Made by a program: the position numbers and the translations under genes. From Mytilus californianus (taxonomy: Eukaryota): a stretch of DNA of 64,000 bases. The stretch covers positions 90,458,001 to 90,522,000 of the forward strand of contig NW_026262712.1 of NCBI RefSeq assembly GCF_021869535.1. The letters are read 5' to 3'. The stretch's first letter is position 1; the number at the start of each line of letters is the position of its first letter. A model generated the notes under the pieces. It did no database searches, was not told the origin of the DNA, and saw only the letters and a program-made list of their open reading frames with translations. Shown here one piece after another: positions 30,920-60,200 of this stretch.

Positions 30920-33900
30920 ATGGGGAATAAGGAGAGTAGTCTAAAATTAAAAAGTGGTACATCGTCGGAACCAAACGCCAGCAACAACAATATAGAGGCA
31001 AGTATTACATGCAAGATAAGGTTATCTAGTGTGAATGATTCCATTGAACAATGAGTTACAACCATACTCTTGGAATATTTTACAGAAACATATATTTGTT
31101 AGTATATATACTTCAATAAACGGCAACTAAACAATAAAAATTACCCATTAGACATCTAGGGAACTCAACAAAAGACAGATGTGTAAACAATATGTCGCGT
31201 TGTAGACCGTTCAAAATCAATAAAAGTTGTGCATAAATAAAACAGAAACTAGCAAAGATTTCAATTGCAACAACACCCAGTTTTCCCAAGGGAAAAGCTT
31301 CAAACAAGCAAAAACCAAAACCAAATTAAAATACACTTTAATAAGAAAACCACTAAATGCTCATATCTAAGACACGGTATATGATTGCACAGTTCTAGTA
31401 TGACTATAACATAATCGATATTATTATATAAATAACACAAGGTATTTGCATGATGGTTTCACTTATACAGGTAAAATTTTAACCCGGAAACTACTCTGGT
31501 ATAAAGTTTAAGACAAAGAACACTTGAAATTATCATTTCATATGTTATTTTTTCACCATCATGAATTGAGTGGTCGTTACAGTAATTATTTTCCCAACTC
31601 ACTAGTTAGGAGACAACTGTAATTGTAATTTAAGCTTGGCATACGTAAAACGTATATTCTATCTAGTCTTGATTTTAAAATGATTTTTTTCTGAAAATTT
31701 TAAATACACTTGACAACACTTAATTTCCGGCTAGTTTAATCTTTACATTTCAAGTTTTAGATGTTTCTGTTGTGAATTGAATGATAATTGGTAAATATTT
31801 TAAAACAAAAAAGTATTTATGCAGCATGCGAAGAGGGGATGATCAGAAAAAGACACCCGATCTACCTTACCAGCAATATTTAAATTGTATTCACATCATT
31901 TGCAATTTTCGGAAATTTAAATTGTATTCACATCATTTGCAATTTTCGGAAATTTAAATATTGTGAGTTTCATTTCAAGTTGATTTACACAACACCAAAA
32001 CAGAAAATAAGGATGATGCTGTACTATCGATTAATGAAACATAATCTGTACACTCACTCGAGAAAGAGAAAAACCATCACACATAACATACTGTAATGGG
32101 CAATGAAATCAAACAAAGACTATCATAACTGCACAAAAACTCATTGTAAAATACAGAATCAATACAAACATTTAGACATGGGACACATCAAACTATTTGT
32201 TAGATATCTAGCCAGGGAAAAAATCATGAAAAGGGCAAAAAAACAAATAGTCTACATATTAACAATTTCGATAAACATACTCACTGTAAGAGAAAAATGT
32301 GCTGTTATACACATAAAAGAAAGTGATAGCGAAGAATGTATAACTACTTGAATAAATGAGCAGATTGTGACTAATAAACTCGTCATAGATAAATGGTCCT
32401 TTGAAAAATAGCATTATCCATCTAAGGTCAATTTTGCTTGAGAGAGATGGAATCCTAGATTCTTGGTAATATTCATATCAATAAACGGCGAATTAAAAAA
32501 AAAAGATTCTTTTTTATATACAACAACTGCAAAAACTGTGTTACGTGAAACACAGATTACTTTTTAAATGGTGACACTTGTAGTATATCTCAACCTGGTA
32601 ATTTTTTTACAGAACTTGCTACGTAACGCCATTAGAATAGCATATAGCATTCCAATTGCAGGTACGTTGCTTTGCTTTTGATTCAGTTTTTGCAGTGTGG
32701 TTTGTGATATTTTATTTTTATACTGGTGGCGGTGTTCTTTTTCTATATTCGAAGTCGTGTCCGTCTTTTTTCTTTAAGAGATTGTTTTCCATTCAAATTT
32801 TCATATTCTGTCATTACCCAGGGTAAAAGAATTTGCATGTATCAATTTCCTGTACCGATGTCTGTCTTTCTCCAATTTTTTAACTTCGATTTTTGATTGG
32901 CCTTCTTATGTAATTTATGTTTCCTCATAAACTGTCCCATGCATATTCAATGCAGTATGTGTCATGTTTTAAGAAAGGTCTTTTTTTTCTATATTTTGCC
33001 TAACTTTTGAGGGAAATTTATAAACAGAACGATTTTAAGAAAGAAAAATATCTGCATCGTTATCAGAAGTAATGCGTTTTTTATATTTTCTTTCCTAAAC
33101 TTGCATCACAGGTCGTGCGATGTCCTTTTAATTCCGCTAAATATCAAATTGGTCAGGAGAGTATGTAATAATCGTCAGTAAGGTTTTACTAGCTCATTCT
33201 TGTATAAAATGATATAAAATTGCATTGAATTTACAATATAGGATTCATGATTTGCGGTTATTCAATTGAAAAACACGTGACATGTGAACGGAAAATGGTA
33301 TATGTTTTCATCGGCCAATCAGCCACCAGTTGCAAAAAATATTTTTTTTGTTTTAGTATCTCACCCTTGTCATTCGCAGACACCAATGTAATCCCAAGAG
33401 CTCTGAAATTGTCTTCTTTAGCAGTCAAAATTTTAACTATGTCGATTTCATCACTAGCATTGTAGGAAAGGTTGTAAATGATTGGTCCCTAAAATAAATA
33501 GTTAAGATCATGAAAACCTTTCAAAATTTTGTAAATTGTATTGATAAATGAACAAGTAAATATCTTATTTAGACACTTTAGTGCAAAGAGATCATTTGCG
33601 GTTAAATGATTACATTTCGACAGTTTTTGCAGCTTTGAACTAAATTCAAGAAGTTTGAAGCCGTAAAACAAATTGTAAGACAAAATTAAGAAAATATGAA
33701 TACTGATGTCTGATATACTATTGTTTTATGCATATCTAGTGTAAGTTATTTGATAGATTTTAACTGTGAATGCAAGGAGTTAAAAAAGTTGTCTGGTCGT
33801 AAATTCTCCATTTCCGAAAATGTACGTTTATTGGATCTTCATTTCAATTGCAGATTTATATGTTTATCGTGACGAAATAAAACCTTTGATTGACAAGATC

Positions 33901-36900
33901 ATTGGTAAAAGAGAAAGCATGATCAGTATAAAAATTGACAGAAATAAAATATACGAAGAAGCAACAGGTCGATTTGTTGGGAAAGTGAAACAGCTTGCTA
34001 AAATTAGCAGTCCCATGCATGAAAAACCTGTGATCACATTCAATGATACCGACGTGTTAGACGTCGATGGAAGTGGATTCCGAAGAGAGTACTATTCGGT
34101 ATACTTTCGAAAATGCATAGCTAATCTTTTTGAAGGACAAGGAAGACAAATGTTACCAAAGAAAGACTGCACCAAAAAGGATGAGTTGAAAGCTCTTGGG
34201 ATAGCCATCGTTGAATGTGTTTTGAATGGTGATTGTGGGTTTCCTTACCTACACAGAGGAATTTATAAAGCTATAATTGGATGTGATTCTGATGAAATTG
34301 ATCAGCATTGCAATTTAAAAGATATTCCGAACGGCGAGGTTCAAATGGTTGTGCAGCAAGTAAGTTTAAGGCTTCTCCCAGTCCAATTTCGTGCTGATGC
34401 CTGTTCCTCGTGAAATTTATACATAGTGACAGTAACACCTAAATGAATATGTTAAGAATTATCATTTACAGTAGAGTATGATGCTGCAATCTAGGATATA
34501 GCATATAGAAAAGATTCAAGGAGTTGACTTAGCTATATCACACTATAAGAAGCTATACTCCAAGTTGTTCAATGTGTCGGATTTAAGTGATTTCTATTTC
34601 AAAACGTTACGAGAATTAAAAGATTTCTAAAATCAATAAACATGAACAATTCTGGTATGGCTGAAAAAAAAGCCTTAGTTTTTCTTTCAGTTTCAACAAT
34701 TACTATTTTCATTTCCTCTGTAGAGACAAGATAACTCTCACTGTTGTTATTCAAATACATACAAATCAAATAAGTCTATAATCAAATCTTCAACTAAATC
34801 GGTGCTGTCTAACTTGAAATTAAGCTTTAAGCATCTAATTCGTGTTTTTGACATACCGTATTAACATGTTCCCCGCTGCTAGGGTCATGTCATTTGTTTT
34901 ATTAGTATAATTGTATAAATCATACTTTTACAAATAACTATTATTTTTTTAATTAAAGTAGAATTTGTATTTTTAATAAATTAATCATACAGGGTTTTAG
35001 TCTAGTTATGCATTTATATGTACGTGAAATTTTTATATATTTCCAAGAAAAACATAAAGTAACGGCCTTTTAAAACATTAAATTAGTTTTGTGAGATTTA
35101 TTTTTACAGATAAACGATGCAAACACTGACGGAGAAATAACCGAAATTCTCGCTAGCGATTTAGCCTCCTTCATTAGCTATGTTGGATGGCCAGTTGGAC
35201 AAACAGTAACGGTAAAAATGCTATTTGGTTATTTTCAATAAATAGATTTGATTGGCTGTAATTACATATATTAATTTTGATATCGGATATGTTCCTTATG
35301 TCGTAACTACAATACCCTCCCTTTTCTGCTTACCCTTCCGGAGTACCTGAGATCACCCCCAGTTTTTGGTGGGGTTTGTGTTGCTTAGTCTTTAGTTTTC
35401 TATGTTGTGTCATCTGTACTATTATTTGTCTGTTTGTCTTTTTATTTTTGGCCATGGCGTTGTCAGCTTGTTTTCGATCTATGAGTTTGACTGTCCCTCT
35501 GGTATCTTTCGTCCCTCTTTTAAACAGATAACACTATAAAAAGGGCTATTTCATAATACATTTAAAAAAAGAGGCAGAAGATACCAAAGGGACAATCCAA
35601 AATCATGTCGTGAGAAAACCGACAATACCATGGTAAAAAGAAAAAGGGACAAAGAGAAAAACAACAATCTACAAAACACAATACAGAAAACTGAAGACTG
35701 AGCAACATGAACTCCGCCAAAACCTTAACTAAGATGAAAAACAACCATTCGACTTCTTCAAAATCACAATAAATAAGTTTTATTGCAATTGACCAATGCT
35801 GATATATCGTTTTACAAGATATACCTAAAATATCGTACGGATATGTAACACATGAAAAAATTCAGATACAAATACAGGGGAGAGTATTTTATAGAGAGCA
35901 CTTTAAAAGCTTATAAACTATAGCATACACTAATAAACGATAGAATATTAGAAATATCGGAAAAAATAGATTTACTGGTATAACTTATATTTTGGAATTG
36001 CGCACGATCATGCTTGTCTCGGGCAGCTTTTGACCTTTTTATACACTAAAAACGTTGAATGTTTACTGATTCTTATATTAGTCTATGAAAACACAGTCTA
36101 TTTACTAGTAACTGTTGAAATTGAGCTATTGAACGAGCTTTCAGAAATTGCGACTTTTAAAAGATAAACACTTTGTGTTTTGTTTTAATTGTATAAGTTG
36201 TTTTTGTGCTTAGTTCCAATCTAATGAGTCAAACTCTTTTCGACATTTTTACTGTTTATTGTTGTTGCTGTGGTGCTGTTGCATCAGTAGTAGGACATAC
36301 TTTAATCACCAATTTCATGAAGAATTAAAAAAATGCGTGAATGTTTTTCTTCTCGGTTTTTACAAATGAAACTTTAAGTATCTTTTAAGAGTGAATTGGT
36401 GTCTCATAGACATAAATTCGAAATTTATTTCCGTTATTCATATTTAAAACTCCAAATCATCTATCAACAAATCTTACACAGTGTCATCAAATCAGAACAT
36501 ATTTTTTAGATGACTAACCGACATGTGTTGCTGCAGTATATACTCCGATGGTTTATCATAGACCACAGACAAAATGAAATAGACCAGTTACGTCACGGTC
36601 TCAGCTATATGGGATTTCTTGATGCCATTAAATCAAACGACTGGTTTGAACCTTTATTTGTTTACTCAGAACAGTACAGCATTACAGCAAGATACATGAA
36701 AGACAAGCTAAACCCAGTCCTAGAAAAACTGGAAGCCAAAACTGAGAAGGAAATTAACTGTGTAAAGTTTGCTAAAGCTTGCATTGATTCCTTAGATGGT
36801 ACGAATAATAAGTTTGTATGGTTTTTAACTCTGCAGATTGTGAGATGTTATAATTATTCAAACATGAATGTGTCCATTGAAATTTGTACAGGGTTAACTC

Positions 36901-37642
36901 TAAAGAGTAATATTTTGTTTCATATTTTAAAAATTATTTCCAAATAGCAAAATATTCCTGTATACGTTGTATTTCTATCCTCAGGCATTGGTTGCATTTG
37001 CCTAATTTGGCACACCCTTTTGGAATTTGGTATTAAATACTATTCATATTCGTTTTTTCCTTAACCTTCTGATTGGTTTGACTCGAGTATTTCTAGTCTT
37101 ATGTAGATGAATCGCGCCTCTTGTGTTCGAAATAGTAAGCCTGGTAGTGACTTTGAACAGATAGTATTCAAATAATTGAAAAAAAAAATAAATATTCAAG
37201 CTGAAAACGCTATCACTTGGACACAGTTTTCCAAAAGAAAAAATCCAAATATTTTACAGGGGTGTAGAAATATCGTCATCTATATTTCTCTTAGCAGCCG
37301 TGTTTATGGGACGTCTGTTTGAATTGCAATTGAACGTTAGGCAAACAACAACTAAAAATAAAATACACAAAGAGGTAGCTGAATTGATAGTTTTAATCTT
37401 CAATACATATGTTCACAATTTCTGTTTCAGATACACAAGCCAGATTACTTTTTGCCTTTGTCACTAACCTCAATGACCCACCATTAGAGGAAGAATCTAT
37501 GGAAATCATCTTTAATACACAAAACCCTGATAGACTTCTACCAGAGAGCTATACATGTCTGAATAGACTTCTTCTTCCACTGGGAAATAAAGATATTAAC
37601 CACTTCAAAGAATCTTTTTTCAAGGCAATAATGGAACAATGA
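30920..37642 (+). CDS. HECT-only E3 ubiquitin ligase gene B (G2E3-like HECT, ~411 aa); join(30920..30997,32613..32661,33854..34359,35110..35211,36510..36798,37431..37642)
   Basis: Phases are consistent throughout. N-terminus MGNKESSLKLKSG..NIE|NLLRNAIRIAYSIPIA|DLYVYRDE. HECT motifs: LDVDGSGFRREYY, GDCGFPYL, EIDQLRHGLSYMGFL, LLFAFVT, LPESYTCLNRLLLP; ends FFKAIMEQ*. Intron 1 requires a GC donor (GAG|gcaagt). Confidence 0.88.
31878..31959. repeat. 37-bp perfect tandem duplication
   Basis: ATTTAAATTGTATTCACATCATTTGCAATTTTCGGAA twice, plus a partial third unit, in intron 1 of gene B. Confidence 0.95.
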
Positions 37643-38373
37643 TACAGATTTCTGACATACCAAATTGTTTTTGTGTTTATTTTGTTTTTCACTTATTGTT
37701 GTTGCATGCACGAATAAAAGAGAAATCAACTGTGAATTTCCTTAGACAAAAGAATGTTATACCACTCAACACAACAGAAATGAGAGATTACTATTTGGAA
37801 ATCAAGATCATGAAATTGAAGGACGACGAAAACCATATCAGTTGAATAGTTGCAATTAATTTAACGTATAATACTGATTCCAGAGCGCACATGTAATTCG
37901 GGGATGTTTTCAAAAAGTTACGCTCGATAACCAAATGAAGGGAAATTTTGGAAGAAAAAATGTTAATGACAAAAACTTAAGATACTAATCAGTCTTAAGA
38001 CAACTCTTTGTCGATTTAAACTGTTAGATCATTTGCCTCTTATCGTTAACAATGAAATGTTTCATTAATATCCAATTTCACGGCAGGCTTATCAAAGCTT
38101 GAAAATTGGTGAAATTTGTTATCTATTACTATGAGGTCTACTCATAGATATCATGGACATTAAAGCTCACAAATGCTTTAAGGTGTGAAAAATGTGTATC
38201 AGAACGGAAAAAGGATCTTTGTAATATTAATGTTCAATTACACTTTCATAATTTGAGTATGTTTTTGAAAAAGTAATGATTTATTGCGTTTTATTAAGGC
38301 AAAATGTTGAATTAATTTCAAGACTTCACAATACAATACAATCATTGTCCGGTTGTGTCGGTTCATTTAAGAA

Positions 38374-38520
38374 TTGAATGCTTCTTTTTGTAAATCTATT
38401 GGGGTGTAAAAGCGTTGACCAAAGTACATTTTGTATGAAGCGTGGAAGCGCTTCATTCCAAAAATGTGCGCACGGTCAACGCTTTTACAACCCTATAAAG
38501 TTACTAAAAGAAGCATTCAA
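38374..38520. repeat. ~147-bp imperfect palindrome (MITE-like core)
   Basis: TTGAATGCTTCTTTT..GGTGTAAAAGCGTTGACC..ACATTTTGTATGAAGCG / CGCTTCATTCCAAAAATGT..GGTCAACGCTTTTACAACC..AAAAGAAGCATTCAA. Confidence 0.8.
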
Positions 38521-38879
38521 TACTTATAATTACATTTTTTGCTGGGAACATGAAAACACGATTTCTATCAAGTTTTTCTTTTATTTACCTGTGCACTTTA
38601 TTGTAGAAGCTAGTGTCATCATGAATTTTAAATTTCATTTTGAAATGAAGGTTAATTTTAGAATGACGCGGGATTGCTGTTAGCCAATCAAAATAACGTA
38701 TTATAATGAAACATACATGTAATGTAATTATATAAGATTAACAGACCGGTTATGTTCAGTAGATAAAAGAGAATCAATATAAGTATTAACTATGATATTG
38801 ATATGTCCTTAACTCACAGCTGATAATTTTCCTTTTTTCCCAACCTAGCATGTATCTTCCTAAACTAGCTTAGTATGAC

Positions 38880-39052
38880 GTCCATTTTCGCTGATCTAGT
38901 ATACATTTTGTTTAGGGGCAAGCTGAAGCCCGCCTCCGGGTGCGGGATTTTCTCGCTGTGATGAAGACCTATTGGTGGCCTTGGGCTTTTTTCTGCTTTT
39001 TGGTCGGGTTGTTGTCTCTCTGACGCATTCCCCGTTTCCATTCTCAATTTTA
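38880..39052 (+). repeat. Interspersed repeat family R1, copy 2
   Basis: Near-identical to 14077-14238 and 44458-44622. Confidence 0.85.
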
Positions 39053-39239
39053 AAATGACCTTCAACAGTTTTGGGTGTTCTGTTTAACCACAACTCCATA
39101 TAATTATATATATATATATATATATATATTGTTCTTTCTATACAATTGTCTGTTGAATAATGAAAATTTCAAAAATAGAAAACCTCGTTGAAAGTATTTT
39201 ACATAGATTTATTACCATTGTTTCGTTCAATACTCTTTT

Positions 39240-39520
39240 GATAACTGTTATTTCCGAGGATATCATTTGCACTGCTAGAAGCAAGTAGAATTCTAAACTT
39301 CAATACTTCTTCAGTTAAACTGTTATTTCCGATGATACCATTTGCACTGCTATAATCCATTAGTTTAACAACCATTGGCTCGTTCATTACTACTCCTGTT
39401 AAACTGTTATTTCCGAGGATATCATTCGCACTGCCAAAATCAATTAGATTTTTACCATTGGCTCGTTAAATAAGACTCCCGTTAAACTGTTATTTACGAG
39501 AATACCATTCGCACTTAACG
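39240..39520. repeat. Minisatellite, four units (periods 75, 84, 83 bp)
   Basis: Core AACTGTTATTT(C/A)CGA(G/T)GATA(T/C)CATT(T/C)GCACT recurs at ~39243, 39318, 39402 and 39485. Confidence 0.85.
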
Positions 39521-40127
39521 AATCAAAAGGGGAAGGGGGACGGTCAATTAAGAGTTATTCATTATTTATCTTATCTCGAAAATACATCCGTAAATGATTT
39601 CATCGATCTATATAAATGTCCAGCTGTTTACTCGATTACTCGAATATTGATGACGCTGTTGATGTTATTGAATTTTACAGAAATAAAACATTTGCTAGCA
39701 AGTCCTACGTTCAATGAGCTTTACGAATATTCCCTTTCTCGTCAAATGGTTTTGATCTTCGTGGTTTTAGAATTTATCAAAATTTTTATTTTCATAAAGC
39801 TCTCCCTTTTGAAGTTTTTATTAGATATTCTTTATTCAACCAGTTTGCCTCCTTTCTTCATTGGACTCTTTCTGCATTTCTGTAAGATAATTTGAGGCGG
39901 CGCTTGTACATTACCTTGGCGACTTCTTTCTTGGGGAGGGGGAGGGACGGGACCAGTCATTGTGCTGACCTGCTCCATACTTTCAAAGATTATCTGCAAT
40001 GATCACAAGGATTACATTCTGAGGTCTGAGGTAAAGAAATTGACACTTATGACATGACTATCCGATGAATAACTTAAGAAAGTTCCATTTGTTTTAAACA
40101 ATAAGAAGGTCACGCTAAGGGAAATGC

Positions 40128-44622: not shown

Positions 44623-44686
44623 TATTATGTATCTTATAAAGAGGTTCTCAGTATATATATTTACTTTTATCGTTTCGTATGAAATC

Positions 44687-45816: not shown

Positions 45817-48783
45817 AAAAATTAAAAGTCAAAGAACATTAGTAAATTACCGGAATAAGATGGCAGCATAATACCCATTGCCAAACAACTGAACAATTAA
45901 AGATATTAGACGAATCAAATAATTAAAAAAAAATGCGTTTGCACTTGTTATGACTAATATTTATTATATAGGCAGACGAAGGGATAAAAAACAAATGCTA
46001 CAAATATAAGAAATGAAAATCACTCTCAGGAGGTATGCATTGCATACTTTAAATAGTTTGAGCAATATACATTTCAACATTGTTCAATAACATTAATTTA
46101 AAAATATTGTAAAAAACGTCTAACTAAACCATTCACTTTAAAATAAATTGCCTTATTAAATCCTCTGTTGCGTGGTAAGTTACGAACAAAAAATGCAATG
46201 TAAACACGTGTACATCTTAAAATGCATTTTAACAAAGAACTGTCATCGTAAATTATACAAGTAAAGAAATACGATGTAAGCTAATTTCGGTTTAAAATGT
46301 TCAAACACTAGCACGAGTTATTTTTAGATGAGAGAATGACATCATGGAATGTTTGACAAAAAAATTATTTCGCAACCATATGCCTTGTTCAGCTTCATTA
46401 ACTATTTTAATAATATTTTCAAGGCATGTGAAATTTAAATGGCAAGGCACGTTTAGGGGTTTTTTGCCGCTAATTATGATTCGTATACCATTATACATTT
46501 ATTTATTCTGAAGGACATTTTTTATATAATGGATAGTCTCTTCATTTTAAGAAAGAACGATAGTATATTGTATATACGACACAAAAAAAAAAAAACAACC
46601 TGCATACATACAATGTACAGAAATATAGAGAGCATGCAAGAAGTAAGCAAATTTTTTTTTTACATGCATGCGCCCTTTGTTTGCAGATCCGACAAGCCAT
46701 TGAAAGGTTTGGCTTTATAAACTATAGCCTTTTTTCAAGCGTGAACAAAATTTTTATTTTCAGAGAATATGAAATCACAAAATACATCCTTCCATGGTAA
46801 ACATTGTTTCTATCTGTATCAGATTTTTCTCTCGAACTGTCAATATTTTATTATCATATTTTTAATTTCACTTAATATGTTGTTATCTTAAAAAATGTGT
46901 AACCCATGGAAACGAAAATACTTGTAACAAAAACATTAGAAACTTTTTATAAGTGTTTAAATTCAACGATGATTCTGCAAATACAATTAATATTAAAATA
47001 CATTGACATTCGGGCAAATTTGACCCCAAATTGTACCATGTCTAAACGTATTCGAATTTAAATAATAAACAAATCATATACACAACAGTGTATTGAAAAT
47101 GTTAAAGGTATATAGGTTTAAAGTAACTGTAAACAAAGACATAATATGTCATATAATATATGGCAAAGGATTGTTCTTCACTCGAACTAATTCAAAACAG
47201 GACTCTAATTACTCGGAGATTATAGATAAAAACATACGTCAATTGAGGAAGTTAACTTATTCGGTGGAAAAGTTGTGATATATCTAGAAACAAAAATTAT
47301 ATTTATTCCACAATATTATATGATGAAAGATCTACAGGTTCAAAGGTAACGGAATACTTTTTAAAGCTAAACCAGGTGAGTATAAATATAAATAAACCAA
47401 TATCTTTCACAATGTTGAATGTTTATTTGAAATTACCCTCACTGTGTATTTGAATTGTATTTGTACCGCAGGTAGTTGATTAAAACAAAACGTAATATCA
47501 TTCAAGCTTCAAAAGTCCCTGCACTGTATAATAAGTTGTTCTGAAAATGGACTAGAGGGGTAACCACTATCTGACATCTCACAGTTTTCTATACAAAAAA
47601 AAACGTGAAGAAGAGACTTCGAAGGCAGGTGACGAAGTTCCTTACTTGGGACAACAGATAATTATTCCAGATAACAACTACATTAAAGTAAGTTAGTAGC
47701 CAAACGATGTATGAACTTTTACCTATGGCAAAAAGACTTCGTACAAAGGGCTAACATGCAACAAAATGTGGACAATACCGGCTCACCCTAATATGTATTC
47801 AATACCATGTTACAATTAAAGAAATGCACAGGAGTCAGTCGAATATACTCGATACAAAAATATACCACGACGACGATACACAAGTTTTATTTGATTTAAT
47901 GCATGCTTCATATTTATTTATATACGATACCTTATTTGATTTGAATATTTATGTTGCAGGTGTTTGTTATTGTTTGATTTAAACGATAAAATATATTATA
48001 AACCAGTGTGCTTGTGCTAAAAACTAACGTAGCCATTTCTGTCGGCAAATTTGTTCATAGATGTCTAACTCTACAGACTCTTTATTTTATTCATTCTCTC
48101 AAACATTTTTTTTTATATCAAAACGTTTGGTATCGTGCGTACCTGACGAATGTCATTCAGGGAACAAGTGCTGTGCCCGTTGAAATTATAGCAAATATTG
48201 GTGGGGTGGTTTTTTTGTGTGTGTACATAGATATAGGAAGATGTGGTATGAGTGCCAATGAGACAACTCTCCATCCAAGTTACAATTTATAAAAGTAAAC
48301 CATTACAGGTCAAGGTACGGCCTTCAACACGGACCATTGGCTCACACCGAACAGCAAGCTATAAAGGGCTCCAATAAATTACTAGTGTAAAACCATCCAA
48401 ACGGAAAAACCAACGGTCTAATCTATATAAAAACAAAAAACGAGAAACACGTATGTACTATATAAACAGACGACAACTACTGTAATCGGATTCACATGTA
48501 TGTGTATGTAAAAAGTAATGCGCTCTTTTATTACATGCATTTTACTTTAATACACTTAATCATATTTTAAATTTCAAAATATACAGTGTTATCAAATTGG
48601 CTTTCCAGATGATTTATATCACCTGAGACGATATGTATTGTGCAATTTTAAGAGATTAAGATATTATCCCCCACCGATTGTTTGATATATATGTAATTCA
48701 AAAATATCATAACATTTCAGGCATGTGAAAATTTAAGAGATTACTTTTATTCATACATGTGCATGTAGTAGAAAACAACAGAA

Positions 48784-51700
48784 ATGGGACAGACTTCGTC
48801 TATACAGAGTCCTCGCATTGATGCAGTTCCTGGTACCTCTAGACGGAGAACAGGTTTGTTTTGTAAAATATTGTTATACACGTTTAGATTAACTGGTCTA
48901 AATCTTTTGGGTTGATTTAACGATTGAAAGTAATTTGATGTTCTAATTGCTAATAAAAAATGAAATATGGACAATTGTGACATCTTAGCCAATTTGATAA
49001 TTGTGCAAACATTAGATATTTATTTTAGAATAAAAAAAAAACAGCTTCCATTCGTGCATGCATGCATGCATTATCTTGTTCTTGAATAAGGAAAAGTGAA
49101 AGAATGATATATTACCAAATTGATTATTAGAATTCACACGGAGGATTTAGAAACCGTCAAAACAAGGAAAATTTCAGGTTTATATGTAAAACAAGTAACA
49201 TGGTAAATTTTCAAGCATTCAACAGGTAAAAATCGAAATGTTAATGAAATCATGTGATGTAAAGAAGTCTAAATTATATAGTTTTTTTCAATCATTTTTA
49301 CATTGATATGTATCTATATAAGTAAAAATATCATTCAGCATACAACTAAATTTGTGATGTCGCTTTACTTATCGGTTTGATATAACTGATTGAAGGTTAT
49401 TACTTCACCAAAAATTTCATATTACATTGTTGAAGTTGTTTTTTACATTCTTTCACTTACATGGTAGGACTCTATAACACATTTAAAAAAATATGACAGG
49501 AATGTATATTTTTTTTTTACAGCTTCGGTACCAGAAACAACCGATGATTTTAAAGCAACCATAGAAAACATTCGCCAACAACAGCATGGAAGGAAGAAAG
49601 TGATTTCTGTCAACAGAGATGACGTCAAAAGTGTTATGTTTCCATACTTGAAAACACCAAACAGTGAGTTTTCTCCTCTTGATATCACATTTGAATGTGA
49701 TGGTGTATCGGAAAAGGCGGTAGACCTGGGAGGACCTAGCAGAGAATTATTTACACTATTATTTCAAGAATTTTTGCAATCGAACTTGGGACTTTTTGAA
49801 GGAAAAGGTGGATTTGTGTTACCTGTGAACAATAAAAAGGCAATCGATGCTCACGTCTTTCGTGCGTTTGGCAAGGCCGTTGTATTATCGCTTAGTACAG
49901 ATCCTCATGGACCTGGATTTCCGTATTTTCCATCATTTATTGTGAGTTACCTCATTGGAAGAGAGTATATACATGAACTGAGCTCATTGTTCCTTGTCAA
50001 CGAATTTCTTAAACAGTTTATCACAGATGTAAGCTTTGAAATGTGTACCCTTTGTCTAAGTTTGATATCTTATTCTAGTTACTTCTCAATAAGCAAATGT
50101 TACTAGATTGCACGACACTTAATGCCATTGTAAGTGGTTTTGATTATCTAACTAGCCGACAACTTAAGAACAATAGGAAATGACTATTTATACAAATATG
50201 AATGGTATTTAGATTGTTATCAATGTGATCTGTCAAAATGTGGTGAAATATTTGTGAGTAAGATTTTTTCAAACGTGTCATCGTTAGCTCCATAAGTAAG
50301 ACATTGTGTTATTACCAAACTTCGTAATTTACCATAATTTTCATTTAACATGAATAATTTTATAACAATATTGTCCTCGATTTAAAACTAAGTTTTTATT
50401 GGAATCAATAATTTATTGAACATGCAGTTTGAAATGATGCATCAAAGTGCACCGAAACTGAAATGACTACCATTGTGATATTTAAATCGTAACTTACATG
50501 TTTCGGCTACTCATTTAAATATCAATTAAATTTGACCTATATTTTCAGATTACAAATGCAACCACTCAGAATGACTTAGATGATATTATGGGCAATGACG
50601 ACGAAAGATTTACAGATAATTGCGGATGGCCAGGGAATGAAAGGGTTACAGTGAGCATGAATAATTTCATTGTCTTGATAATTTACCCCCTTGAATTATT
50701 TGGGTATTTTACATTTTGAACCTATTGAATGTTTCATGTTTCCAAAACGATACAGATTTTTTCTTCAAAATATTGAATAAACAATCACACTTTTTGCAAT
50801 CATTGTCTTTTTTCAATTATGTATTATATATATGTTAAGTAATTTTGTTTCCAGCATATTTAACCTCATATGTACACCGGATATCCCAATCCAAATCCGC
50901 GGAGGGGTCCAAATCCCGAGGAGCAATTTTAATTTGTTTAGTGCAATTCGTAAATAAAATCTGGATCCGATTCCCATGTAGGATTATGCTCCTTGTGAAT
51001 CGGAATCAGATTTCAATTACCTTCCGCGTTTCGGTCTTGTGCAATTGCTCTTCATGATCCGGGTCCCTCCACGGATTTTGGATCGGGATACCCGATGTGA
51101 TGTGAAATAGTCTGATTGCATATTTATATTATCTTTTAGATGTCTAACAGATGGTCATTTGTGCAAACCTTACTACAATGGGATTTGGTTGATAAACGAA
51201 GAACTGCTCTTGATGATATGAAAAAAGGATTAAATACTTTCAACTTTCTTGATGATACAAAGTCTCTCCCCGAATTTGAACGCATATTTCTTTTGAGAAA
51301 TAAGCAAGAAACAACGGCGAATTTCATACAGAAGAAACTTATTCCAGAAGTACAAAAATTACGTACCGAAAACCAAGAAGAAGAAAAGGCACAGAAACAA
51401 ACAGTTAAATGTCTTCAAATATTAGAAGGTGCGTAGAAATGCTTGTGTAATTTGCCCTAAGCGAATTTTAAAATGAAATATTCATGATTGAATTGCATAT
51501 TATAATGTTTTAATATTCTATAAAAACGTACTAATATTTGTTTGTTTAATGTCATTGCTTTTATCATGAGCAGATACATCAAATTTAAATTTCAAATGAA
51601 ACATCATTTAAATGCTTGAGCACCAGATGTACCATAACAAAATGTAACACCGAAAAACATTAAAATACTTTAAAGAAAATTATGGAGCTTTTAAAATCCT

Positions 51701-51970
51701 TGTATGAACTTTAAAGTATTTGCTTCATTTTCAGACGAGGAGGCTGCTTATCTGTTTCAGTTTATTACCGGACTTGACGATGTACCGCCATACAACTTTT
51801 CCATCCAGGTGGCGTTTAATCGAAAGAATAAAAAAGCGACATTACCTGAAGCTATAACTTGTATTCAGAGACTTCTCATTCCTCTGGGTAACAAATCGAG
51901 ATTAGACTTTTATAAATCATTTGACATTGCAATAAAAATGGGCAGACTTGGATTTTCAGATGATTCATAG
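48784..51970 (+). CDS. HECT-only E3 ubiquitin ligase gene C (G2E3-like HECT, ~400 aa); join(48784..48853,49523..50028,50549..50650,51140..51428,51735..51970)
   Basis: All junctions are GT-AG with consistent phase. N-terminus MGQTSSIQSPRIDAVPGTSRRRT|ASVPE. HECT motifs: EKAVDLGGPSRELF, HGPGFPYF, LFQFITG, LPEAITCIQRLLIP, tail GRLGFSDDS*. The last exon is identical to gene A at 50 of 78 residues (hand count). Confidence 0.92.
50874..51098. mobile_element. ~225-bp foldback/MITE-like element in intron 3 of gene C
   Basis: ACACCGGATATCCCAATCCAAATCCGCGGAGGGGTCC..GAGCAATT pairs with AATTGCTC..GGGTCCCTCCACGGATTTTGGATCGGGATACCCGATGT; GC-rich against an AT-rich background. Confidence 0.7.
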
Positions 51971-54900
51971 CACTGTCGGACTAATGAGTATAACATGTGT
52001 AACTCAGGAGATTATCTATGACACAGATGATTTTGTTTTAATGTGATTTAACGTGAATATCATGACTTGTGAACACTTGAAAAATGTCATACAATTTTTA
52101 AATTGATATACACATCTTATATCAAATTTCTTAAGCTTAATGAATTACTAGTCGTGAATTTACGTATGCTTTAATTGAATTTTATACATTTGAGAATATT
52201 TACATATGAATATCCACGGTAATAACATTCCTATTAGTAATACATGAAATTCATGTCAGCAAATTTATCTGTGTACCAGTGTCATAATATTTGCTAATTT
52301 ATTTTTCAAACTGCGCTTTGAAATCATAATGTGATAATCGTTTTATTCTTATTTTTGTTATGTTATTTTACTATAACACATATAGCCTAAGCAAAAACAT
52401 ATTGCAGTGCAACCCCATATTGAATCATATTGTGCTATCTTACGATTGTATATAATATGGGACATGTATAGTCAGTTTGCTTGCATACTCATTCCTTGTT
52501 TGAGAGAAATAGTATTAAAAATACTTATTACATACAACAGTTGAAAAGATATAATGCAAAAAATTGAAGTTTTTTTTAATGTTTAGTGTAAGTTTTCAAC
52601 ATTTCATAGGCCCTAATTGAGCTCGGCTGGTTCTCCTATATCCCCGTCCGTTCCTTATAGGCCATATTAAAATGTATATTATCTAAAACGTTTAGACAAA
52701 AGACAGAAGCAAACAAAATGTGCAATGTATTCGAATGTCTTTTTTTTTGTTTTTTGTTGCTTGTTATCATTACATGTATAACATTATTGAATTGTGCATT
52801 AAATGTTTATAATATTTTGACTTGAGAATACATGTTAACCTCTTACTAAATCTAAAAGCTTTGCCCTTAGCCACAAATGAAAGCCTGATATCAAAAAGGT
52901 AAAATCAAAAGACGCAGAGTACCGATCTAAGAGATCTCGCAATTACTGAAAGCTCGTTTAAAGCCAGTTCCAACTTATAAATAAATCATGTTCTCCCAGA
53001 CTAACGTATCAGTATCAACCAGTTCACATACAACGGATTTAGTGTAAATGCTTCATAAACGAACTGAGAAAAGCTTGACCTTTTGCCATGCCAAATAAAA
53101 GTAAATATCATCAACAGGATGTTGGACCATACGTTTTCAAAGATGTAAAGCAATACGTATTTGATTTTGTTTAAATTATTAAGGTGCACAGCTCCATGTA
53201 TGGTATGACAAACATGCTATGTGTAAAATAGTAGCTCGACCCGAAACTAAGTGCGCAGTTTTGGTGGTTTACTAGATGTAATTTTTGTTTTTACTTTTCT
53301 CTAATGTTATATGAGATTGGCTTTCCAAACTTACGGTTTCGATTGTTTTTACAGACGATTGAGGTAAAATAAAAAACTCAAATAAGGCAACAGAAGCTAC
53401 TATTCGGCTTTACCGGAAATTAAAGAGATTATACCGAGATACATAAAATTCATGCTTGACCTCTGTTTCATAGCAGCACTGAAATAATGAATGATGTTTT
53501 TTTTTAAATTATTTCATTGCAGGGTTTGTAACGCGTACTGTGTGGATGAATAGAATGTATCCACTTACTTCTGGTGTATTCTCTCCTATTTGATATATAT
53601 CTAGGTTGCTTGCTTTTGCGCATAAATCAGGTCGTTGGTTTTCTATTTTGAATTGTTTTTCATTTTCTCATACAGTGGCCTTTTGTATCTAACATCACAG
53701 TACTCAGATTGCACCGAGTACCCAAATTGCACCCATTTAGCAAAAGTAGCTGCGGAAATTAAATATACACAATAAGTTCACAGTATATATCAACAGATGA
53801 AGTATTCAATGGAAAAAGTAAAATCTACGGAAACGTCGCCATGCGACGTCCACAAAAAGTCAACTTTTAAAAAAAAATAGCAATTTAAATATGTTACAGT
53901 CATTCATTTCTTAAAAAAATAAATAGTGAGCATGGACTTATGTTTAATTGCTATAATATTTGGAGAAATAAAACAAAACATCAGTTATTCGATTTTTAAG
54001 GATGTGAACTTAAGCATAGATGCAATTTGGGTACTCCTCATTACAGAATCATGGATTGTTTGGAGGTAGGTTCAAACCATTTTTATATGATTCAATATGG
54101 ATTCAAAACTAAATTGGTGGAACTATATAGTAAACAAGGATACAGCTACAAAATAAAAACACAGCGTGGAAACTTTTGTTTGGATCATAAATAAACATAG
54201 GTGAAAAAACTGACAAAATAGGTGCAATTTGGGTACCGTCACGATAACCATTACAGTATTGGTTTTGCTCGTTGTTGGTGTATTAATATCCTCGTTCTTT
54301 GGTTTCTGGTGGATAGTTGACAATAATTCCACATCTCCTTATTTTCATATTAAGTTGTTGAGGGGTAAGAGAGGTGGAGGATATCAAAGGAATATTCAAA
54401 CTCGAAGACAAACTGACAACGCCATGGCAAAAGCGAAAAACGACAAAAAGACAAACAGTATACAAAACACAACATAGCAAAATAAATGCTGAGCAACACG
54501 AACCCAACAAAAACCATGGGATCTCAAGAGGCTCCAGAAGGATTAGCAGATCTTGCTCTATATGCATTTAATTATTATAAGGCATAAATATGAATCAACA
54601 AATATAAAATGTGTTAAATAAGAATTTGATTTGTTCCTTACATTGTTAAAATTTAAATTGGTTTGGTAAAAAGTCAACATTTGTGAATTCATTTGAACCG
54701 AGATGGTGCATATTCCTCAACATCATGTACGACAATCACAATATAGGAAAGTCCAACTTAGCAATATTGAAATGTTTACAAATTTGTATTATTCACTTAG
54801 AAGGATTCTACATTAAAATATTAAGCCATGAACTATAATATTGCCTGCACTGGTCCATAACGACATTCTAAAAATATACCTCTACACACCATACTTAGGG

Positions 54901-57211
54901 AATTGTTCAATAGTTTCTTTAAACAATGACAGATCTTATATTGCTACAGTTACAAAAACTAGCAGATTTATACTATGAACATATTTCTGGATTTATTTAA
55001 TCACTATCTTTTATTTTAAAATGCTAGTATTCAAATGAAACTAGCATTGCATCCTCAGCAGAAGCGAAATGTCATAGCTATACCTGTGAATAATGCATAC
55101 CCTTAACACTTTCAAAATAAGAATAAAAAAAAGACCGACCCAAGGAAAATCATATGACAAAATGCATAGGACCAAACAAAATGGAGACAACCGAATACAG
55201 TTAAGTTGAACTGTTGTACAATTAATCAAATGTTAGAGACAGCGATAAATGCTAACATTTGATGATTGATAACCAATTCAATATTCATTTATTTTTGTAT
55301 TCATGAAATTATTGCCATTTAAGGAAATTCTTGGTCACATTGTTTATATCTACTACTTTGCATCGGTCTTTATATAAGTCTGGGGAATAACTGAATTGTA
55401 GGTTTAATATATGCTCCTATAATGAATTTTCCATTTATGTTGACGATTTGACTTTCCCCGCAATGACCATGACAAACTGACCGTTAAACTAAAACTCTTT
55501 TGCACTTACTGATAAGAAAAAAGTTTGCATGACATCAGTTGATACCAGTTATCATGCATAAGTTATCACTGGGTGTACATAAACTTTTAACTACGTCTTG
55601 GCAGACATTTCTTACACAGACGTTACATTTGTGGCTAAATTTCAAACGTGGTTATATGTCATTTGTGGTGTGAGCCTTGTACATTGCTAGGTTATTCAGA
55701 TGAAACGTTGTCACAAATTTAGACGTTCATAATATATAATTATTTTTCCTTCCTTCCTTCCTTCCTTCAGACAGACAGACAGACAGACAACAACAAAAAA
55801 TAAAAAAATAATATGATACATAGAGAGTAAATGATAGAGATTTATTTGTACTTTAAACGTCGAGTGTTAGTATGTTATTTGTAACGGGTCGTTATCCATG
55901 ATATGGTCTTATACACATGCATTTGAACGACTGGCTGGTTTTCTACAATTCACGTACATTAATTCTTTGATTTTTAGATTCTTCGTTTAAAATTCTTTTA
56001 TCATTGTGTATGTAACGGATTTTGGTCCGTATCTTTTATGCAACTTGCAATAATTTATGTTCTTTAAAGATAATTTGATAGCAAAAAAATACCGTCTCGA
56101 CATACATAAAAATAACAAATAAACAACTTCATTCTTCAAGATTTATCATGTTTCTCATTATTCAAACTGTATATTATTATAGACAAATATTTAAATACCT
56201 TTAAAATTTGAAGATTTGGAAAATTGTCAAATATCGATCTCACACATGTGGGATAAATCATTTTTCTAAATTTGAAAATTTAAACCCCTGTTAAATTTGT
56301 TTTTATTAATGCTACCTGTTCATTCATATGTTTACGATATATTTATACATATTGTTTATAAACACAGGTCTTATAACATGTAATGATTTCGTTCAAGGTA
56401 AGTTTAAGTTTCTTCGTTTTAATTTATGCAATGATACGTATATATAGATATAAAGTTATGCCATGGTGAGTTGGTAATTTCTAGTAGAAAAATTCCATTT
56501 TCTAGTACTTAACTGCATTTACATCTAAACAAACGAAAATGCTGAAACAATCCAGCTTTCAGTTTTATTTCTTTCGAGTTACGTACGAAACATCCAACAA
56601 AAATTAAGTGAAAGCAGTAATCCATTCTTAGTCTATTGTAGACATTTGTTTGTATTATTCGTATTTTTTAATTTATTTTGTAAAATTGAAAAAAAAAATT
56701 ATACATTCAGGTAGTCCAAACTGTGCTTTCTGGATTTACCTTCATTAGGAATGCTCAAACCCGAAAATTGAAAGCCAGGGGTGAGTCAAAATCGAAACTC
56801 AATAATAGTATATTGATATAACAAACGATGACATTTAGAATGGAAATGCGGAATGTGTCAAAGAGACAACAACCCAACCAAAGAGCAGAAAACAAACGAG
56901 TATGGTTCCGCAAAATAGATTTCTGAACTAAATACTAAAAGAATGTTTGAAAATCCATTGAAGTATTTGCTTCCTGTTATCAGTGCACAGTGGCAGGTAG
57001 GATTCTGTAATTCAAAAACAGAAGTAAACCTTGCCTGCCAAATGACAAAATTTTGTACTTGCTAAACAATATCCAATGAATATATATATATAATTCATGA
57101 ATAATTTTTATTTTTACGATATTTTCTAGGTCTATCATAATAACAAGATCATGTTATTCACATTTTAAACTTGATTCAAGAAATAAAGATTGGAGAAAAA
57201 AAATAGAGGAA

Positions 57212-60200
57212 ATGGGTAATCAACCACCAAAAGAGAAAAACCCCAGTGGTACAGTTCGTGGGCTAGAGGTACAACTACTAATTCACAAAATTATCAAGCT
57301 GCTATTTACTTAACAAAATCAGATTATTTTTCTTTTGTTTTTATATATAAATAAGAAGATATAGTATGAGAGCCAATGAGACAACTATCCATCCAAGTCA
57401 CAATGTGTAAAAAGTAAACAATTATAGGTCAAAGTACGGCTTTTAACATGGAGCCTTGGCTCACACCGAACAACAAGCTATAAAGGACCCCAAAAAGACT
57501 TGTGTAAAACAATTCAAACAGGAAAACCAACGGTCTAATCTATATAAAAAACGAGAAACACTCATGAACCACACAAACAAACGACAACCACTGAACAACA
57601 GGCTCCTGACTTAGGACAGGTGCATAAAGATGCAGCGGGTTACATGTAACGTTTTTTTTTTTGAAATTGTAAAAGTTGATTTTAGTGTATAGTATTAGTT
57701 ACACAGTCTGCTAGTGACCTAATACGATATATATGGGGTCAGTAAATTCCATATGGAGTGAGATCGAAACGAATTTATTTTACCGACTATCTTAACATGT
57801 GGCATTTAGACTATTAAAGTGATCAAGTCTTCAATATAAAGAACATACTTCCATTGGTCTATACAAAAACAAATGCCAACAATAACAACTTGTGTTTTCT
57901 GCATTTATTTCAATCGTTCATCACAAATTTCTTCATCTGTTGTCCGCGGGTGAAACGTTTCAGATTTTTCCTCAACGCCGTGTTTTTTTTTATATAGGGA
58001 CGTAACACCATTACTAACCGTGTATTAAAATAAACGACGCCTACTAACCCCATATGAAATATACAGGTCTTCACGTGGTCGCTTTTAACTAATGATATTC
58101 CTAGAAATGTATAAGAGGTAAGATAATTCTGCATACTGGATCACTGGACTATTGAGAACATCATCATCTATTCCTGATCAAGTAAATATATCGATATTGC
58201 TTAAAATAATATTGTACAATGAAACCTAATCTTTACTATGTTGTGGTTTGTAGACTTTTGTTTATCTTTTGGTCGTTTTTTGTTTTGTCAGTTTGTCTTC
58301 GATTAATGAGTTTGAACATCCTTTTTGTATCTGCCACCTCTCTTTTGCATCATATATTTGTCGTTGATTAATTTAAACACTACTTATTGTCATAACATAG
58401 AATATTGTTTTGTATTGTTATAGGATCTTTTAAAGGATGCTATGAGGTTAGCCCATGTTGCAGTATCAGGTACGAGCATTACGCATGTTAAGTATATCGT
58501 AATTTTGAAATCTTTTAACAATTATATAAATTCAATAATACCGCTTTTTAAATTCTTAAATGTCTTTGTGATATTGCACAAATGGATGTAGGTGTATTTC
58601 GTTATTATACTAATACATGAAGCAATAAAAAAAAAACTTTTTATTTTACAAATACTTATTTGCAAGTCAGAATTATCTACAAAACATTTCTATTTTCTAT
58701 AGTATTTAAAAAAACAACAACAAAATGTCATTTCGGTAAGTTTCTTTAAGATCCCGTGTGTCGTACTTTGTGAACAAAAATAATTGTAGGTTGAGACTGG
58801 TATCCGGCCGTTATTTGCCAAGTCTCATAATAGCTGTATATTCCGAAGGAATACTAAATATCTTACGGAGGGAACCAACTTAATGTAGGTTATACTTCAA
58901 TGATACAACAACCAGTGACATAAAACAAGAGTTTAGTGCATCTTCAGATGAATTCCATGGATTGTAAGCTGAGTAGTAGAAGTACCGCACAATTGCATTC
59001 ATAAAGATCTTTGGACCTTGGTGAAAATAGCAGCTAAGGGCACTGAGCTTTACTAATATACAATATCAGCTTGCAAAATTGTGTATTGTAGGATGTGACA
59101 TCCTAATGTTCGTATCTAATATATAGATATACACCAATAAAGTTTTCGGATACATTAAAATCCAATGTTATTGACATTTTGTTATTTCCTTTTCCAACAT
59201 AAGAATAGCAGTAAATTAACTATTAAGCTGGGATCATATTCTAATCTGTGTCGATTATGCAAGATGTGGCGAATAAGTCACATAACCACGTTTCAGTGCT
59301 TATCGGGGATTGCTTACTTGCGCGTTATGTGAAAAATAAATTAATTGATAGAATCTTAAATGAACAGTTGATTTACAATGAAAATTAAAACGTTTTGGCA
59401 AGAAAAGCTGTATTTGTACTATTGATAGCAGTTTGTGTGAATTTAGAATAATTTCAAAAAATTCGTGGTTATAAAAACCGCCATATGCAAAGGAATGATC
59501 CAATCCAACAATCGGTCATTTTTACCCCAAATAAATTCTAATAAGTTAATACATGACGTTGTATTTCACCTGCTCCTATACTGGCGAGCAGTGCACCAGC
59601 ATCCCAGGTAGGCTAATATAATATGAGATTTATTTGCTTTATATTGCATTTTGTTCTTTTCAAAATGTTCACTTTAGTTGTTATTTTAACAACAGATTTA
59701 TATTCCTATCGTGAGGGTATTAAACCAGCTATTGACCAAATAACTGGAAACACAGAAAAAGTTGTTCAAATGGAAGTGGACAAAAAGAAAATTTATGAAC
59801 ATGCCATGGCTCGTTACATTGGAAAGATTAGGACCATGCGCACTGGAATGAAACCTACGCATGAATGTCCTGTGATTACTTTTATTGGAGAAGATGCCAA
59901 TAAGTTTGATGTCGACGGAAGTGGATTTCGGAGACAATATTATTCAATGTTCTTTCAAGAGTGTCTGAAAAGACTTTTTGAAGGTTCCGGTAGAAACCAG
60001 CTTCCAAAACATGATATAACGAAAAAAGATGAATTTACTGCCTTAGGTATTGCGATAGTAGAGGCCATTTTGAATGGGGACTGTGGATTTCCATATCTTA
60101 ACAAAGCTGTATTTATGTTAATACTTGAAAAAAGTGATGATGAAATAGAACAAAGCCTGAACATTAGTGACATACCCCTAGGTGATGTATGGAATACAGT

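What the first reader, a model, noticed from the sequence alone, without database searches (positions are those of the whole stretch)
30920..57268. Each HECT gene starts with a small exon encoding an N-myristoylation-like motif
Seen: B begins MGNKESS (30920), C begins MGQTSS (48784), D begins MGNQPPK (57212), and A begins MGAEK..SK (28819, frameshifted). The peptides are otherwise unalignable, yet Gly2 is kept in all four, and Ser6 is kept in B and C. Established: N-myristoyltransferase requires Gly2 and prefers Ser/Thr at position 6. Inference: lipid anchoring replaces a substrate-binding domain by targeting the ligase to membranes. D lacks Ser6 and has prolines, so it may be a weaker substrate.
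Basis: partly seen in the sequence, partly recalled or inferred. Interest (0 to 1): 0.78.

Follow-up and report, generated by a model that had tools for sequence, protein, structure and literature searches.

The report
Mussel HECT ligases with myristoylation-type starts
Four neighbouring mussel genes encode bare ubiquitin-ligase (HECT) domains whose short floppy N-terminal tail starts with Met-Gly in a pattern that fits a lipid (myristate) attachment signal, and that start is kept in nearly all relatives across bivalves, so lipid attachment is a well-supported but still untested prediction.

Summary
The window is from Mytilus californianus. My hand-built models of B, C and D reproduce the RefSeq proteins exactly, starting MGNKESS, MGQTSS and MGNQPPK.

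- **Start codons:** each MG codon sits in a small first coding exon behind a non-coding 5' exon. Each has an in-frame stop upstream and a purine at -3. RNA reads confirm B's exon structure, including a GC-AG intron.
- **Gene A:** its frameshift is a 16-nt deletion in this haplotype. Another DNA run of the same species label and a transcript carry the intact MGAEESYLQEKSK.
- **Conservation:** 36 of 37 full-length homologues from six bivalve orders start MG. Variability is lowest at positions 2, 3 and 6, the positions that N-myristoyltransferase reads. The protein tree spans about 15 substitutions per site.
- **Tail:** it is predicted to be disordered.

Caveats:
- D and some C alleles have Pro at position 6, though they keep Asn or Gln at position 3.
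- D has an annotated isoform with an in-frame upstream ATG.
- No tail has a nearby Cys or a basic patch, so stable membrane anchoring is not implied.
- Lipidation itself is untested.

I found no paper describing a myristoylated HECT ligase. The same scan noted this gene cluster before, on this same stretch.

The parts
30908..30997 (+). Gene B first coding exon. It has 12 nt of 5'UTR, then ATG at 30920 and MGNKESSLKLKSGTSSEPNASNNNIE. It ends in phase 0 with a GC donor.
   Evidence: Sequence. RNA joints 30663>30908 and 30997>32613 in runs X4, X5 and X6. The model equals XP_052065692.1.
30605..30663 (+). Gene B non-coding 5' exon.
   Evidence: X6 transcript contig and one X4 read. There is an in-frame TAA 7 codons before the ATG. 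The only uATG is out of frame, with a 5-codon uORF.
32613..32661 (+). Gene B mini exon, NLLRNAIRIAYSIPIA, ending in phase 1.
   Evidence: RNA joints.
33854..37642 (+). Gene B remaining coding exons: 33854-34359, 35110-35211, 36510-36798 and 37431-37642. They encode the HECT domain.
   Evidence: Exact match to P0206. Pfam HECT 44.6 bits.
48721..48853 (+). Gene C first coding exon. ATG at 48784, MGQTSSIQSPRIDAVPGTSRRRT, ending in phase 1.
   Evidence: The model equals XP_052065696.1. Two in-frame stops lie 6-7 codons upstream.
47294..47375 (+). Gene C non-coding 5' exon, inferred from a near-identical transcript.
   Evidence: Logan transcript L002 maps here. The GT donor is at 47376.
49523..51970 (+). 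Gene C remaining coding exons: 49523-50028, 50549-50650, 51140-51428 and 51735-51970. They encode the HECT domain, with the catalytic Cys at residue 365.
   Evidence: Pfam HECT 68.2 bits covering profile positions 1-303 of 306. AF2 model plus Foldseek to NEDD4 HECT structures.
57130..57268 (+). Gene D first coding exon. ATG at 57212, MGNQPPKEKNPSGTVRGLE, ending in phase 0.
   Evidence: The model equals XP_052065691.1.
56311..56465 (+). Gene D 5' exon with two possible donors. The donor after 56397 gives an MG start. The donor after 56465 brings an in-frame ATG at 56458 and gives RefSeq isoform X1, MPWSIIITR...MGNQ, 436 aa.
   Evidence: L005 mapping, P0219 sequence, and the motif search.
58424..62776 (+). 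Gene D mini exon 58424-58469 (DLLKDAMRLAHVAVS) and HECT exons 59696-60207, 60991-61092, 61821-62109 and 62562-62776.
   Evidence: Pfam HECT 40.3 bits.
28781..28828 (-). Gene A first coding exon. ATG at 28819-28817, reading MGAEKNQKQ then stop. This haplotype lacks 16 nt that the intact form MGAEESYLQEKSKAVTKT has.
   Evidence: DNA run X1 has the 16 nt put in behind 28807. The intact transcript is P0241/L003.
30337..30462 (-). Gene A non-coding 5' exon. It lies 143 nt from the known 5' end of B's 5' exon, head to head.
   Evidence: L003 and L004 mapping. A trace of RNA with the first mate on +.
24457..28122 (-). Gene A remaining exons: 28122-27635, 26851-26750, 25713-25425 and about 24689-24457. 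The exon 3 donor reads AT instead of GT in the window. RefSeq starts A at an internal Met (357 aa).
   Evidence: P0199. L003 mapping.

Best explanation
A, B, C and D are a tandem cluster of stand-alone HECT-type ubiquitin ligases of about 390-410 aa in Mytilus californianus. Each protein is a complete HECT catalytic domain behind a disordered tail of 25-45 residues.

The tail begins Met-Gly-(Asn/Gln/Gly/Ala)-x-x-(Ser/Thr, mostly). I think the most likely mechanism has three steps:
1. Methionine aminopeptidase removes Met1.
2. N-myristoyltransferase attaches myristate to Gly2 during translation.
3. The lipid on its flexible tether places the otherwise domain-less ligase at membranes, or onto a partner protein or a pocket of its own. 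This binding is probably reversible and weak, because no second membrane signal is present.

What is shown:
- the gene models and start codons;
- conservation of the motif across bivalves;
- the complete HECT domain with its catalytic Cys.

What is inferred:
- that myristate is actually attached;
- what the lipid does.

Within the cluster, B, C and the intact A allele fit the classical motif. D (Pro6, Asn3) is an atypical or weaker candidate. A is a null allele in this haplotype.
For: Models and start codons:
- Models of B, C and D equal the RefSeq proteins.
- RNA reads and contigs confirm B's 5' exon, MG exon, GC-AG intron and mini exon.
- In-frame stops lie upstream of all four ATGs, with no in-frame ATG between. 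All four have a purine at -3 and G at +4.
- The same holds in nine assembled transcripts, including oyster and ark-shell-like lineages.

Conservation:
- 36 of 37 full-length homologues start MG. They come from Mytilida, Ostreida, Pectinida, Arcida, Unionida and Solemyida.
- Position 3 is only N/Q/G/A/T. Position 6 is S/T in 24 and S/T/A/G in 28 of 36. Position 7 is never Pro.
- Entropy is 0.18, 2.0 and 2.0 bits at positions 2, 3 and 6, against 3.0-3.5 bits at positions 4, 5 and 8.
- The tree has two deep clades, each containing a Potamilus gene, and about 15 substitutions per site in total.
- The Gly codon differs among the paralogues (GGA, GGG, GGA, GGT), so the conservation is at protein level.
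- An RNA allele of B changes Lys4 to Thr but leaves G2, N3 and S6 intact.

Structure:
- In the AF2 model of C, residues 1-26 have pLDDT below 50, followed by a confident HECT fold.
- The profile matches whole HECT domains in the PDB.

Literature:
- Asn3 or Gln3 is reported to allow myristoylation without Ser6 (PMC4736023).
Against: - There is no biochemical evidence of lipidation, and no predictor was available beyond the PROSITE-type pattern.
- D in all Mytilus species, and the C alleles MGQTQP and MGQIQP, have Pro at position 6. The Tegillarca and Solemya homologues have Asp there.
- D has a RefSeq isoform with a 30-residue in-frame extension, and M. trossulus B has two. These would bury the Gly.
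- No tail has a Cys near the start or a polybasic stretch. Membrane anchoring by myristate alone would therefore be weak.
- uORFs are present in the 5'UTRs of C and D.
- One divergent homologue (Ylistrum, MASAQR) lacks Gly2.
Confidence: 0.68

Rival explanations
1. Gly2 is kept for a reason other than myristoylation. Candidates are efficient Met removal and N-terminal stability, another N-terminal modification, a Gly-specific degron, or translation-start context. On this reading the proteins are soluble, unlipidated HECT ligases.
For: - Several lineages keep Gly2 although position 6 is Pro, Asp or Val.
- No second membrane signal is present.
- G at +4 is part of the favoured start context in all genes.
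Against: - Start context needs only G at +4, which Ala, Glu, Asp or Val codons would also supply. Yet Gly is found in 36 of 37.
- Positions 3 and 6 are also constrained, and in exactly the way NMT requires.
- The lineages without Ser/Thr6 mostly keep Asn3 or Gln3, the reported compensating residue.
Confidence: 0.2
2. The MG codons are not the real starts. Translation begins at upstream in-frame ATGs, so Gly is internal, as in RefSeq D isoform X1, M. trossulus B isoforms X1/X2 and several ab initio models.
For: - P0219 (D isoform X1), P0183 and P0210 (M. trossulus), and P0151 and P0203 (ab initio models) carry extensions.
- The alternative donor after 56465 brings in an in-frame ATG at 56458.
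Against: - B transcripts in M. californianus have an in-frame stop 7 codons upstream.
- All nine assembled transcripts checked have in-frame stops and no in-frame ATG before MG.
- The extensions are unrelated between species.
- One extension (P0203) reads the antisense of gene A's exon 2, so it is an artefact.
- The sister transcript of D has stops where isoform X1 reads through.
Confidence: 0.07
3. The shared MG is a chance feature, or simply inherited without constraint.
For: The four genes are paralogues, so four MG starts are not four independent events.
Against: - The tree spans about 15 substitutions per site, and the rest of the tail cannot be aligned.
- The more distant HECT relatives found in the same search rarely start MG.
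Confidence: 0.03

Closest known systems
N-myristoylated RING-type E3 ligases, such as ZNRF1/ZNRF2 and Neuralized (named from my own knowledge, not tested here)
   Same: A ubiquitin ligase whose placement depends on an N-terminal Met-Gly lipidation signal on a short flexible tail, rather than on a folded targeting domain.
   Different: Those are RING ligases, which have no catalytic cysteine intermediate. These are HECT ligases. I found no paper describing a myristoylated HECT.
NEDD4-family HECT ligases (NEDD4, Rsp5, SMURF, WWP, ITCH)
   Same: The HECT fold and catalytic Cys. These are the best Foldseek matches, probability 1.0 over about 400 columns. They are membrane-directed ligases.
   Different: The NEDD4 family reaches membranes and substrates through C2 and WW domains. 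Here there is no domain other than HECT, only a 25-45 residue tail.
G2E3, the name some sources give to homologues ('G2/M phase-specific E3 ubiquitin-protein ligase[-like]')
   Same: The naming suggests HECT-domain similarity, and G2E3 is also a small HECT-class protein.
   Different: G2E3 has N-terminal zinc-finger (PHD/RING-like) domains (my own knowledge). None is present here. The M. coruscus HECT survey lists G2E3 as absent and does not include this clade (PMC11353290).
Classical myristoyl-tail proteins, such as Src-family and Abl kinases and the PKA catalytic subunit
   Same: An MGxxxS/T-type start on a disordered N-terminal region ahead of a catalytic domain. PKA-like cases lack Ser6 but have Asn3.
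   Different: Src-type proteins add a basic patch or palmitoylated Cys as a second membrane signal. These tails have neither. That points to weak or switchable binding, or intramolecular docking as in Abl.

Membership tests
NMT substrates (N-myristoylated proteins) | Met-Gly at the true translation start | tested here: met
   RNA-supported for B. In-frame upstream stops for A, C and D and in nine transcripts. Exception: D isoform X1.
NMT substrates (N-myristoylated proteins) | Position 3 not E, D, R, K, H, P, F, Y or W | tested here: met
   N, Q, G, A or T in all 36 MG homologues, including A-D.
NMT substrates (N-myristoylated proteins) | Position 6 S/T/A/G/C/N, and position 7 not Pro | tested here: inconclusive
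   Met for B, C and the intact A allele. Not met for D (Pro6) or for the C alleles MGQTQP/MGQIQP. 28 of 36 homologues fit overall, and position 7 is never Pro. Ser6 is reported not to be strictly required when Asn3 or Gln3 is present.
NMT substrates (N-myristoylated proteins) | Accessible, unstructured N-terminus | tested here: met
   In the AF2 model of C, residues 1-26 have pLDDT below 50 and no secondary structure. This is a prediction only.
NMT substrates (N-myristoylated proteins) | Covalent myristate on Gly2 | not testable with these tools
   Needs metabolic labelling or mass spectrometry.
HECT E3 ubiquitin ligases | HECT domain (PF00632) above the gathering score | tested here: met
   68.2 bits (C), 44.6 (B), 40.3 (D) and 60.8 (intact A-like), against a cut-off of 23.9.
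HECT E3 ubiquitin ligases | Bilobed HECT fold | tested here: met
   The profile aligns positions 28-394 to the AREL1 HECT domain. Foldseek gives probability 1.0 to NEDD4, Rsp5 and ITCH HECT structures.
HECT E3 ubiquitin ligases | Catalytic cysteine in the C lobe | tested here: met
   Cys365 of C, in the context LPEAITC, is nearly invariant in the 35-sequence alignment.
HECT E3 ubiquitin ligases | Ubiquitin thioester formation and ligase activity | not testable with these tools
   Needs a biochemical assay.
G2E3 orthologues | N-terminal PHD/RING-like zinc fingers ahead of the HECT domain | tested here: not met
   HECT is the only Pfam family found. Only 25-60 residues precede it.
NEDD4 family | C2 and WW domains | tested here: not met
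   No such Pfam hits.

The most novel reading that the evidence does not exclude
Bivalves carry an ancient pair of lipid-tethered, domain-less HECT ubiquitin ligases. The pair predates the split of the unionid and pteriomorph lineages and is still adjacent in Potamilus and Mytilus. They would be the first HECT ligases whose placement is set by N-myristoylation. The signal shows living variation within a species: a Ser6/Pro6 polymorphism in C, a null allele of A, and an isoform of D that buries the Gly.
Probability: 0.55. Interest if true: 0.6.

Novelty: new variant of a known kind. Interest (0 to 1): 0.5.

Why it matters
HECT ligases are usually large, and they find substrates through added domains such as C2, WW, RLD or ankyrin.

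A family that is only a catalytic domain plus a lipidation signal would be a minimal way to direct a HECT ligase. It would also give a compact system for asking how far placement alone sets HECT substrate choice.

It corrects the record for bivalves as well. A published HECT survey of a sister mussel missed this clade, and several database models carry false N-terminal extensions that hide the motif.

The claim is cheap to test with G2A mutants and click-chemistry labelling.

Tried and rejected
- **First models of B and D were wrong.** I first joined the MG exon straight to the large HECT exon, using GT donors at 31002 (B) and 57249 (D). They kept the frame, but homologues showed an extra segment. 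RNA then confirmed B.
- **Single-exon Pfam scans** recognised only the C-lobe exons. Full-length proteins were needed.
- **Upstream extensions in database models:**
  - P0203 reads the antisense of A's exon 2.
  - P0151 and P0016 are ab initio extensions. The Tegillarca-like transcript P0192 contradicts P0016, and the B transcript L001, with an in-frame upstream stop, argues against P0151.
  - The RefSeq isoforms P0183, P0210 and P0219 are kept as a caveat, not rejected.
- **Chance explanation** rejected on the tree length and on the control set of distant HECT proteins.
- **A as an assembly error** is unlikely. The window differs from another DNA run by a clean 16-nt indel and also has a mutated donor at exon 3. 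The null state may still be haplotype-specific.
- **Literature:** searches for a myristoylated HECT ligase found nothing relevant.
- **Not done:** I could not run a dedicated NMT predictor.
Full report
**What is there**

The window is AT-rich animal DNA. A profile search with the large HECT exon of the four genes returned a protein identical to gene B, named XP_052065694.1 of Mytilus californianus. The window is therefore from that mussel.

There are four HECT genes: A on the minus strand, and B, C and D on the plus strand. A and C are one subtype; B and D are the other.

I built the gene models by hand from open reading frames, splice sites and paralogue alignments. The final models of B, C and D translate exactly to RefSeq:
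- B: XP_052065692.1, 411 aa
- C: XP_052065696.1, 400 aa
- D: XP_052065691.1, 406 aa

**The observation**

- B: ATG at 30920, MGNKESS.
- C: ATG at 48784, MGQTSS.
- D: ATG at 57212, MGNQPPK.
- A: ATG at 28819 on the minus strand, MGAEKNQKQ followed by TAA.

B's exon ends at 30997 with a GC donor (AG|GCAAGT), and D's ends at 57268.

Two details need correcting.
- Each MG exon is the first coding exon, not the first exon. Non-coding 5' exons lie at:
  - 30337-30462 for A (minus strand)
  - 30605-30663 for B
  - 47294-47375 for C
  - 56311-56397 for D
- B and D have an extra mini exon, 32613-32661 and 58424-58469. It encodes a short LLxxAxRxA segment before the large HECT exon.

**Are these the real start codons?**

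I laid RNA data of the same species label on 28100-34000. It gave spliced joints for B:
- 30663 to 30908
- 30997 to 32613, the GC-AG intron, in five reads with five different starts plus two contigs
- 32661 to 33854

B's mRNA has an in-frame TAA seven codons before the ATG. Its only uATG is out of frame, with a five-codon uORF.

For A, C and D, near-identical assembled transcripts (L002-L005) map onto the window's exons. In the window sequence, in-frame stops precede each MG ATG with no in-frame ATG between. All four starts have a purine at -3 and G at +4. Five more transcripts from distant members, including oyster and a Tegillarca-like species, show the same arrangement.

Some database models carry upstream extensions.
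- Several are ab initio artefacts. One reads the antisense of A's exon 2.
- RefSeq D isoform X1 (436 aa) is real sequence. An alternative donor after 56465 brings in an in-frame ATG at 56458.
- The sister transcript of D has stops in that stretch, so the extension is not conserved.
- I could not measure how abundant isoform X1 is.

**Gene A**

A's exon 1 is 39 nt where phase 1 is needed. A DNA run with the same species label has 16 more nucleotides at this point. A transcript, P0241, reads MGAEESYLQEKSKAVTKT through it.

The window haplotype also has AT instead of GT at the exon 3 donor. RefSeq starts A at an internal Met. So A is a damaged allele here, and an intact MG-starting form exists.

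**Conservation**

I collected 37 full-length homologues. They come from Mytilus species, oysters, scallops, an ark shell, the freshwater mussel Potamilus and the protobranch Solemya.
- 36 of the 37 start MG.
- Position 3 is only N, Q, G, A or T.
- Position 6 is Ser or Thr in 24, and S/T/A/G in 28, of the 36.
- Position 7 is never Pro.
- Entropy is lowest at positions 2, 3 and 6: 0.18, 2.0 and 2.0 bits, against 3.0-3.5 at positions 4, 5 and 8. These are the positions N-myristoyltransferase reads.

The protein tree has two well-supported deep clades, each with a Potamilus member. The two Potamilus genes have adjacent accession numbers. Total tree length is about 15 substitutions per site.

More distant HECT relatives from the same search have long, unrelated N-termini and almost never start MG. 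The Gly codon differs among the four window genes. An expressed B allele changes Lys4 to Thr and leaves positions 2, 3 and 6 untouched.

**The protein**

HECT is the only Pfam family found. The family profile aligns along whole HECT domains of solved structures.

An AlphaFold model of C has mean pLDDT 80. It gives a confident HECT fold from about residue 30 and a disordered tail at residues 1-26. Foldseek matches NEDD4-type HECT domains with probability 1.0. The catalytic Cys, residue 365 in C, is nearly invariant.

**Interpretation**

The most likely reading is co-translational N-myristoylation of Gly2 on a flexible tail.

No tail has a Cys near the start, and net charge over residues 2-20 is about -3 to +4. 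The usual second membrane signal is therefore missing. Myristate alone binds membranes weakly (established knowledge). Transient binding, a myristoyl switch, or docking to a partner protein are as likely as stable anchoring.

D and the C alleles MGQTQP and MGQIQP have Pro at position 6. The MGQIQP transcript sits next to the window's C in the tree, so it is probably an M. californianus allele. These forms keep Asn3 or Gln3, which is reported to support myristoylation without Ser6 (PMC4736023). D is therefore uncertain rather than excluded.

**Novelty**

The proteins are annotated in RefSeq as uncharacterized. Searches of the paper library found no description of a myristoylated HECT ligase. 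A survey of HECT genes in M. coruscus lists 22 genes, reports G2E3 as absent and does not mention this clade or myristoylation (PMC11353290).

I rate this a new variant of a known kind: a lipidation-directed E3 ligase, but of HECT type. It rests on strong comparative evidence and has no biochemical test yet.

The scan's index shows the same cluster was noted before, on this same stretch.

Noticed in passing
window 30337-30663: A and B are head to head. The known 5' ends of their non-coding first exons are only 143 nt apart (30462 and 30605), which suggests a shared bidirectional promoter.
   Followed up: partly
window 30997-32613: B's first coding intron is a GC-AG intron with the donor AG|GCAAGT. 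It is confirmed by RNA reads and two transcript contigs.
   Followed up: yes
window 26740-26760 (minus strand): A's exon 3 donor reads AT instead of GT in this haplotype. The RefSeq model bridges it with a non-canonical AT...AC junction (…DMVTIR|NRLYY…), whereas intact transcripts read …DMVTLDNRLYY….
   Followed up: partly
window 48793-48801; transcript L002: C appears polymorphic at residues 4-6: TSS in the window, IQP in a near-identical transcript, TQP in M. coruscus. The change spans three adjacent codons, while Gly2 and Gln3 stay fixed.
   Followed up: partly
window 29676-29872, 31646-32039, 33222-33418: DNA contig depth in run X1 is very high, hundreds to thousands of times the neighbouring depth. 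This marks high-copy repeats in the A-B intergenic region and in B's introns.
   Followed up: no
window 4148-4435 and 6285-6554 (minus strand): Open reading frames have macro-domain-like sequence (…IAFPAVGTGYHEF…). This suggests a separate gene with macro domains upstream of the HECT cluster.
   Followed up: no
Potamilus streckersoni KAK3607154/KAK3607155 (P0015, P0013): One B/D-type and one A/C-type gene carry consecutive accession numbers on one contig. The two-subtype tandem pair therefore seems older than the split of the unionid and pteriomorph bivalves.
   Followed up: partly
window 37431-37642 and 62562-62776: B and D end shortly after the catalytic Cys region (…KESFFKAIMEQ, …WAALYDVQR). 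They lack the GRxGF-type C-terminal tail that A and C keep. Another note of this scan also flags this.
   Followed up: no
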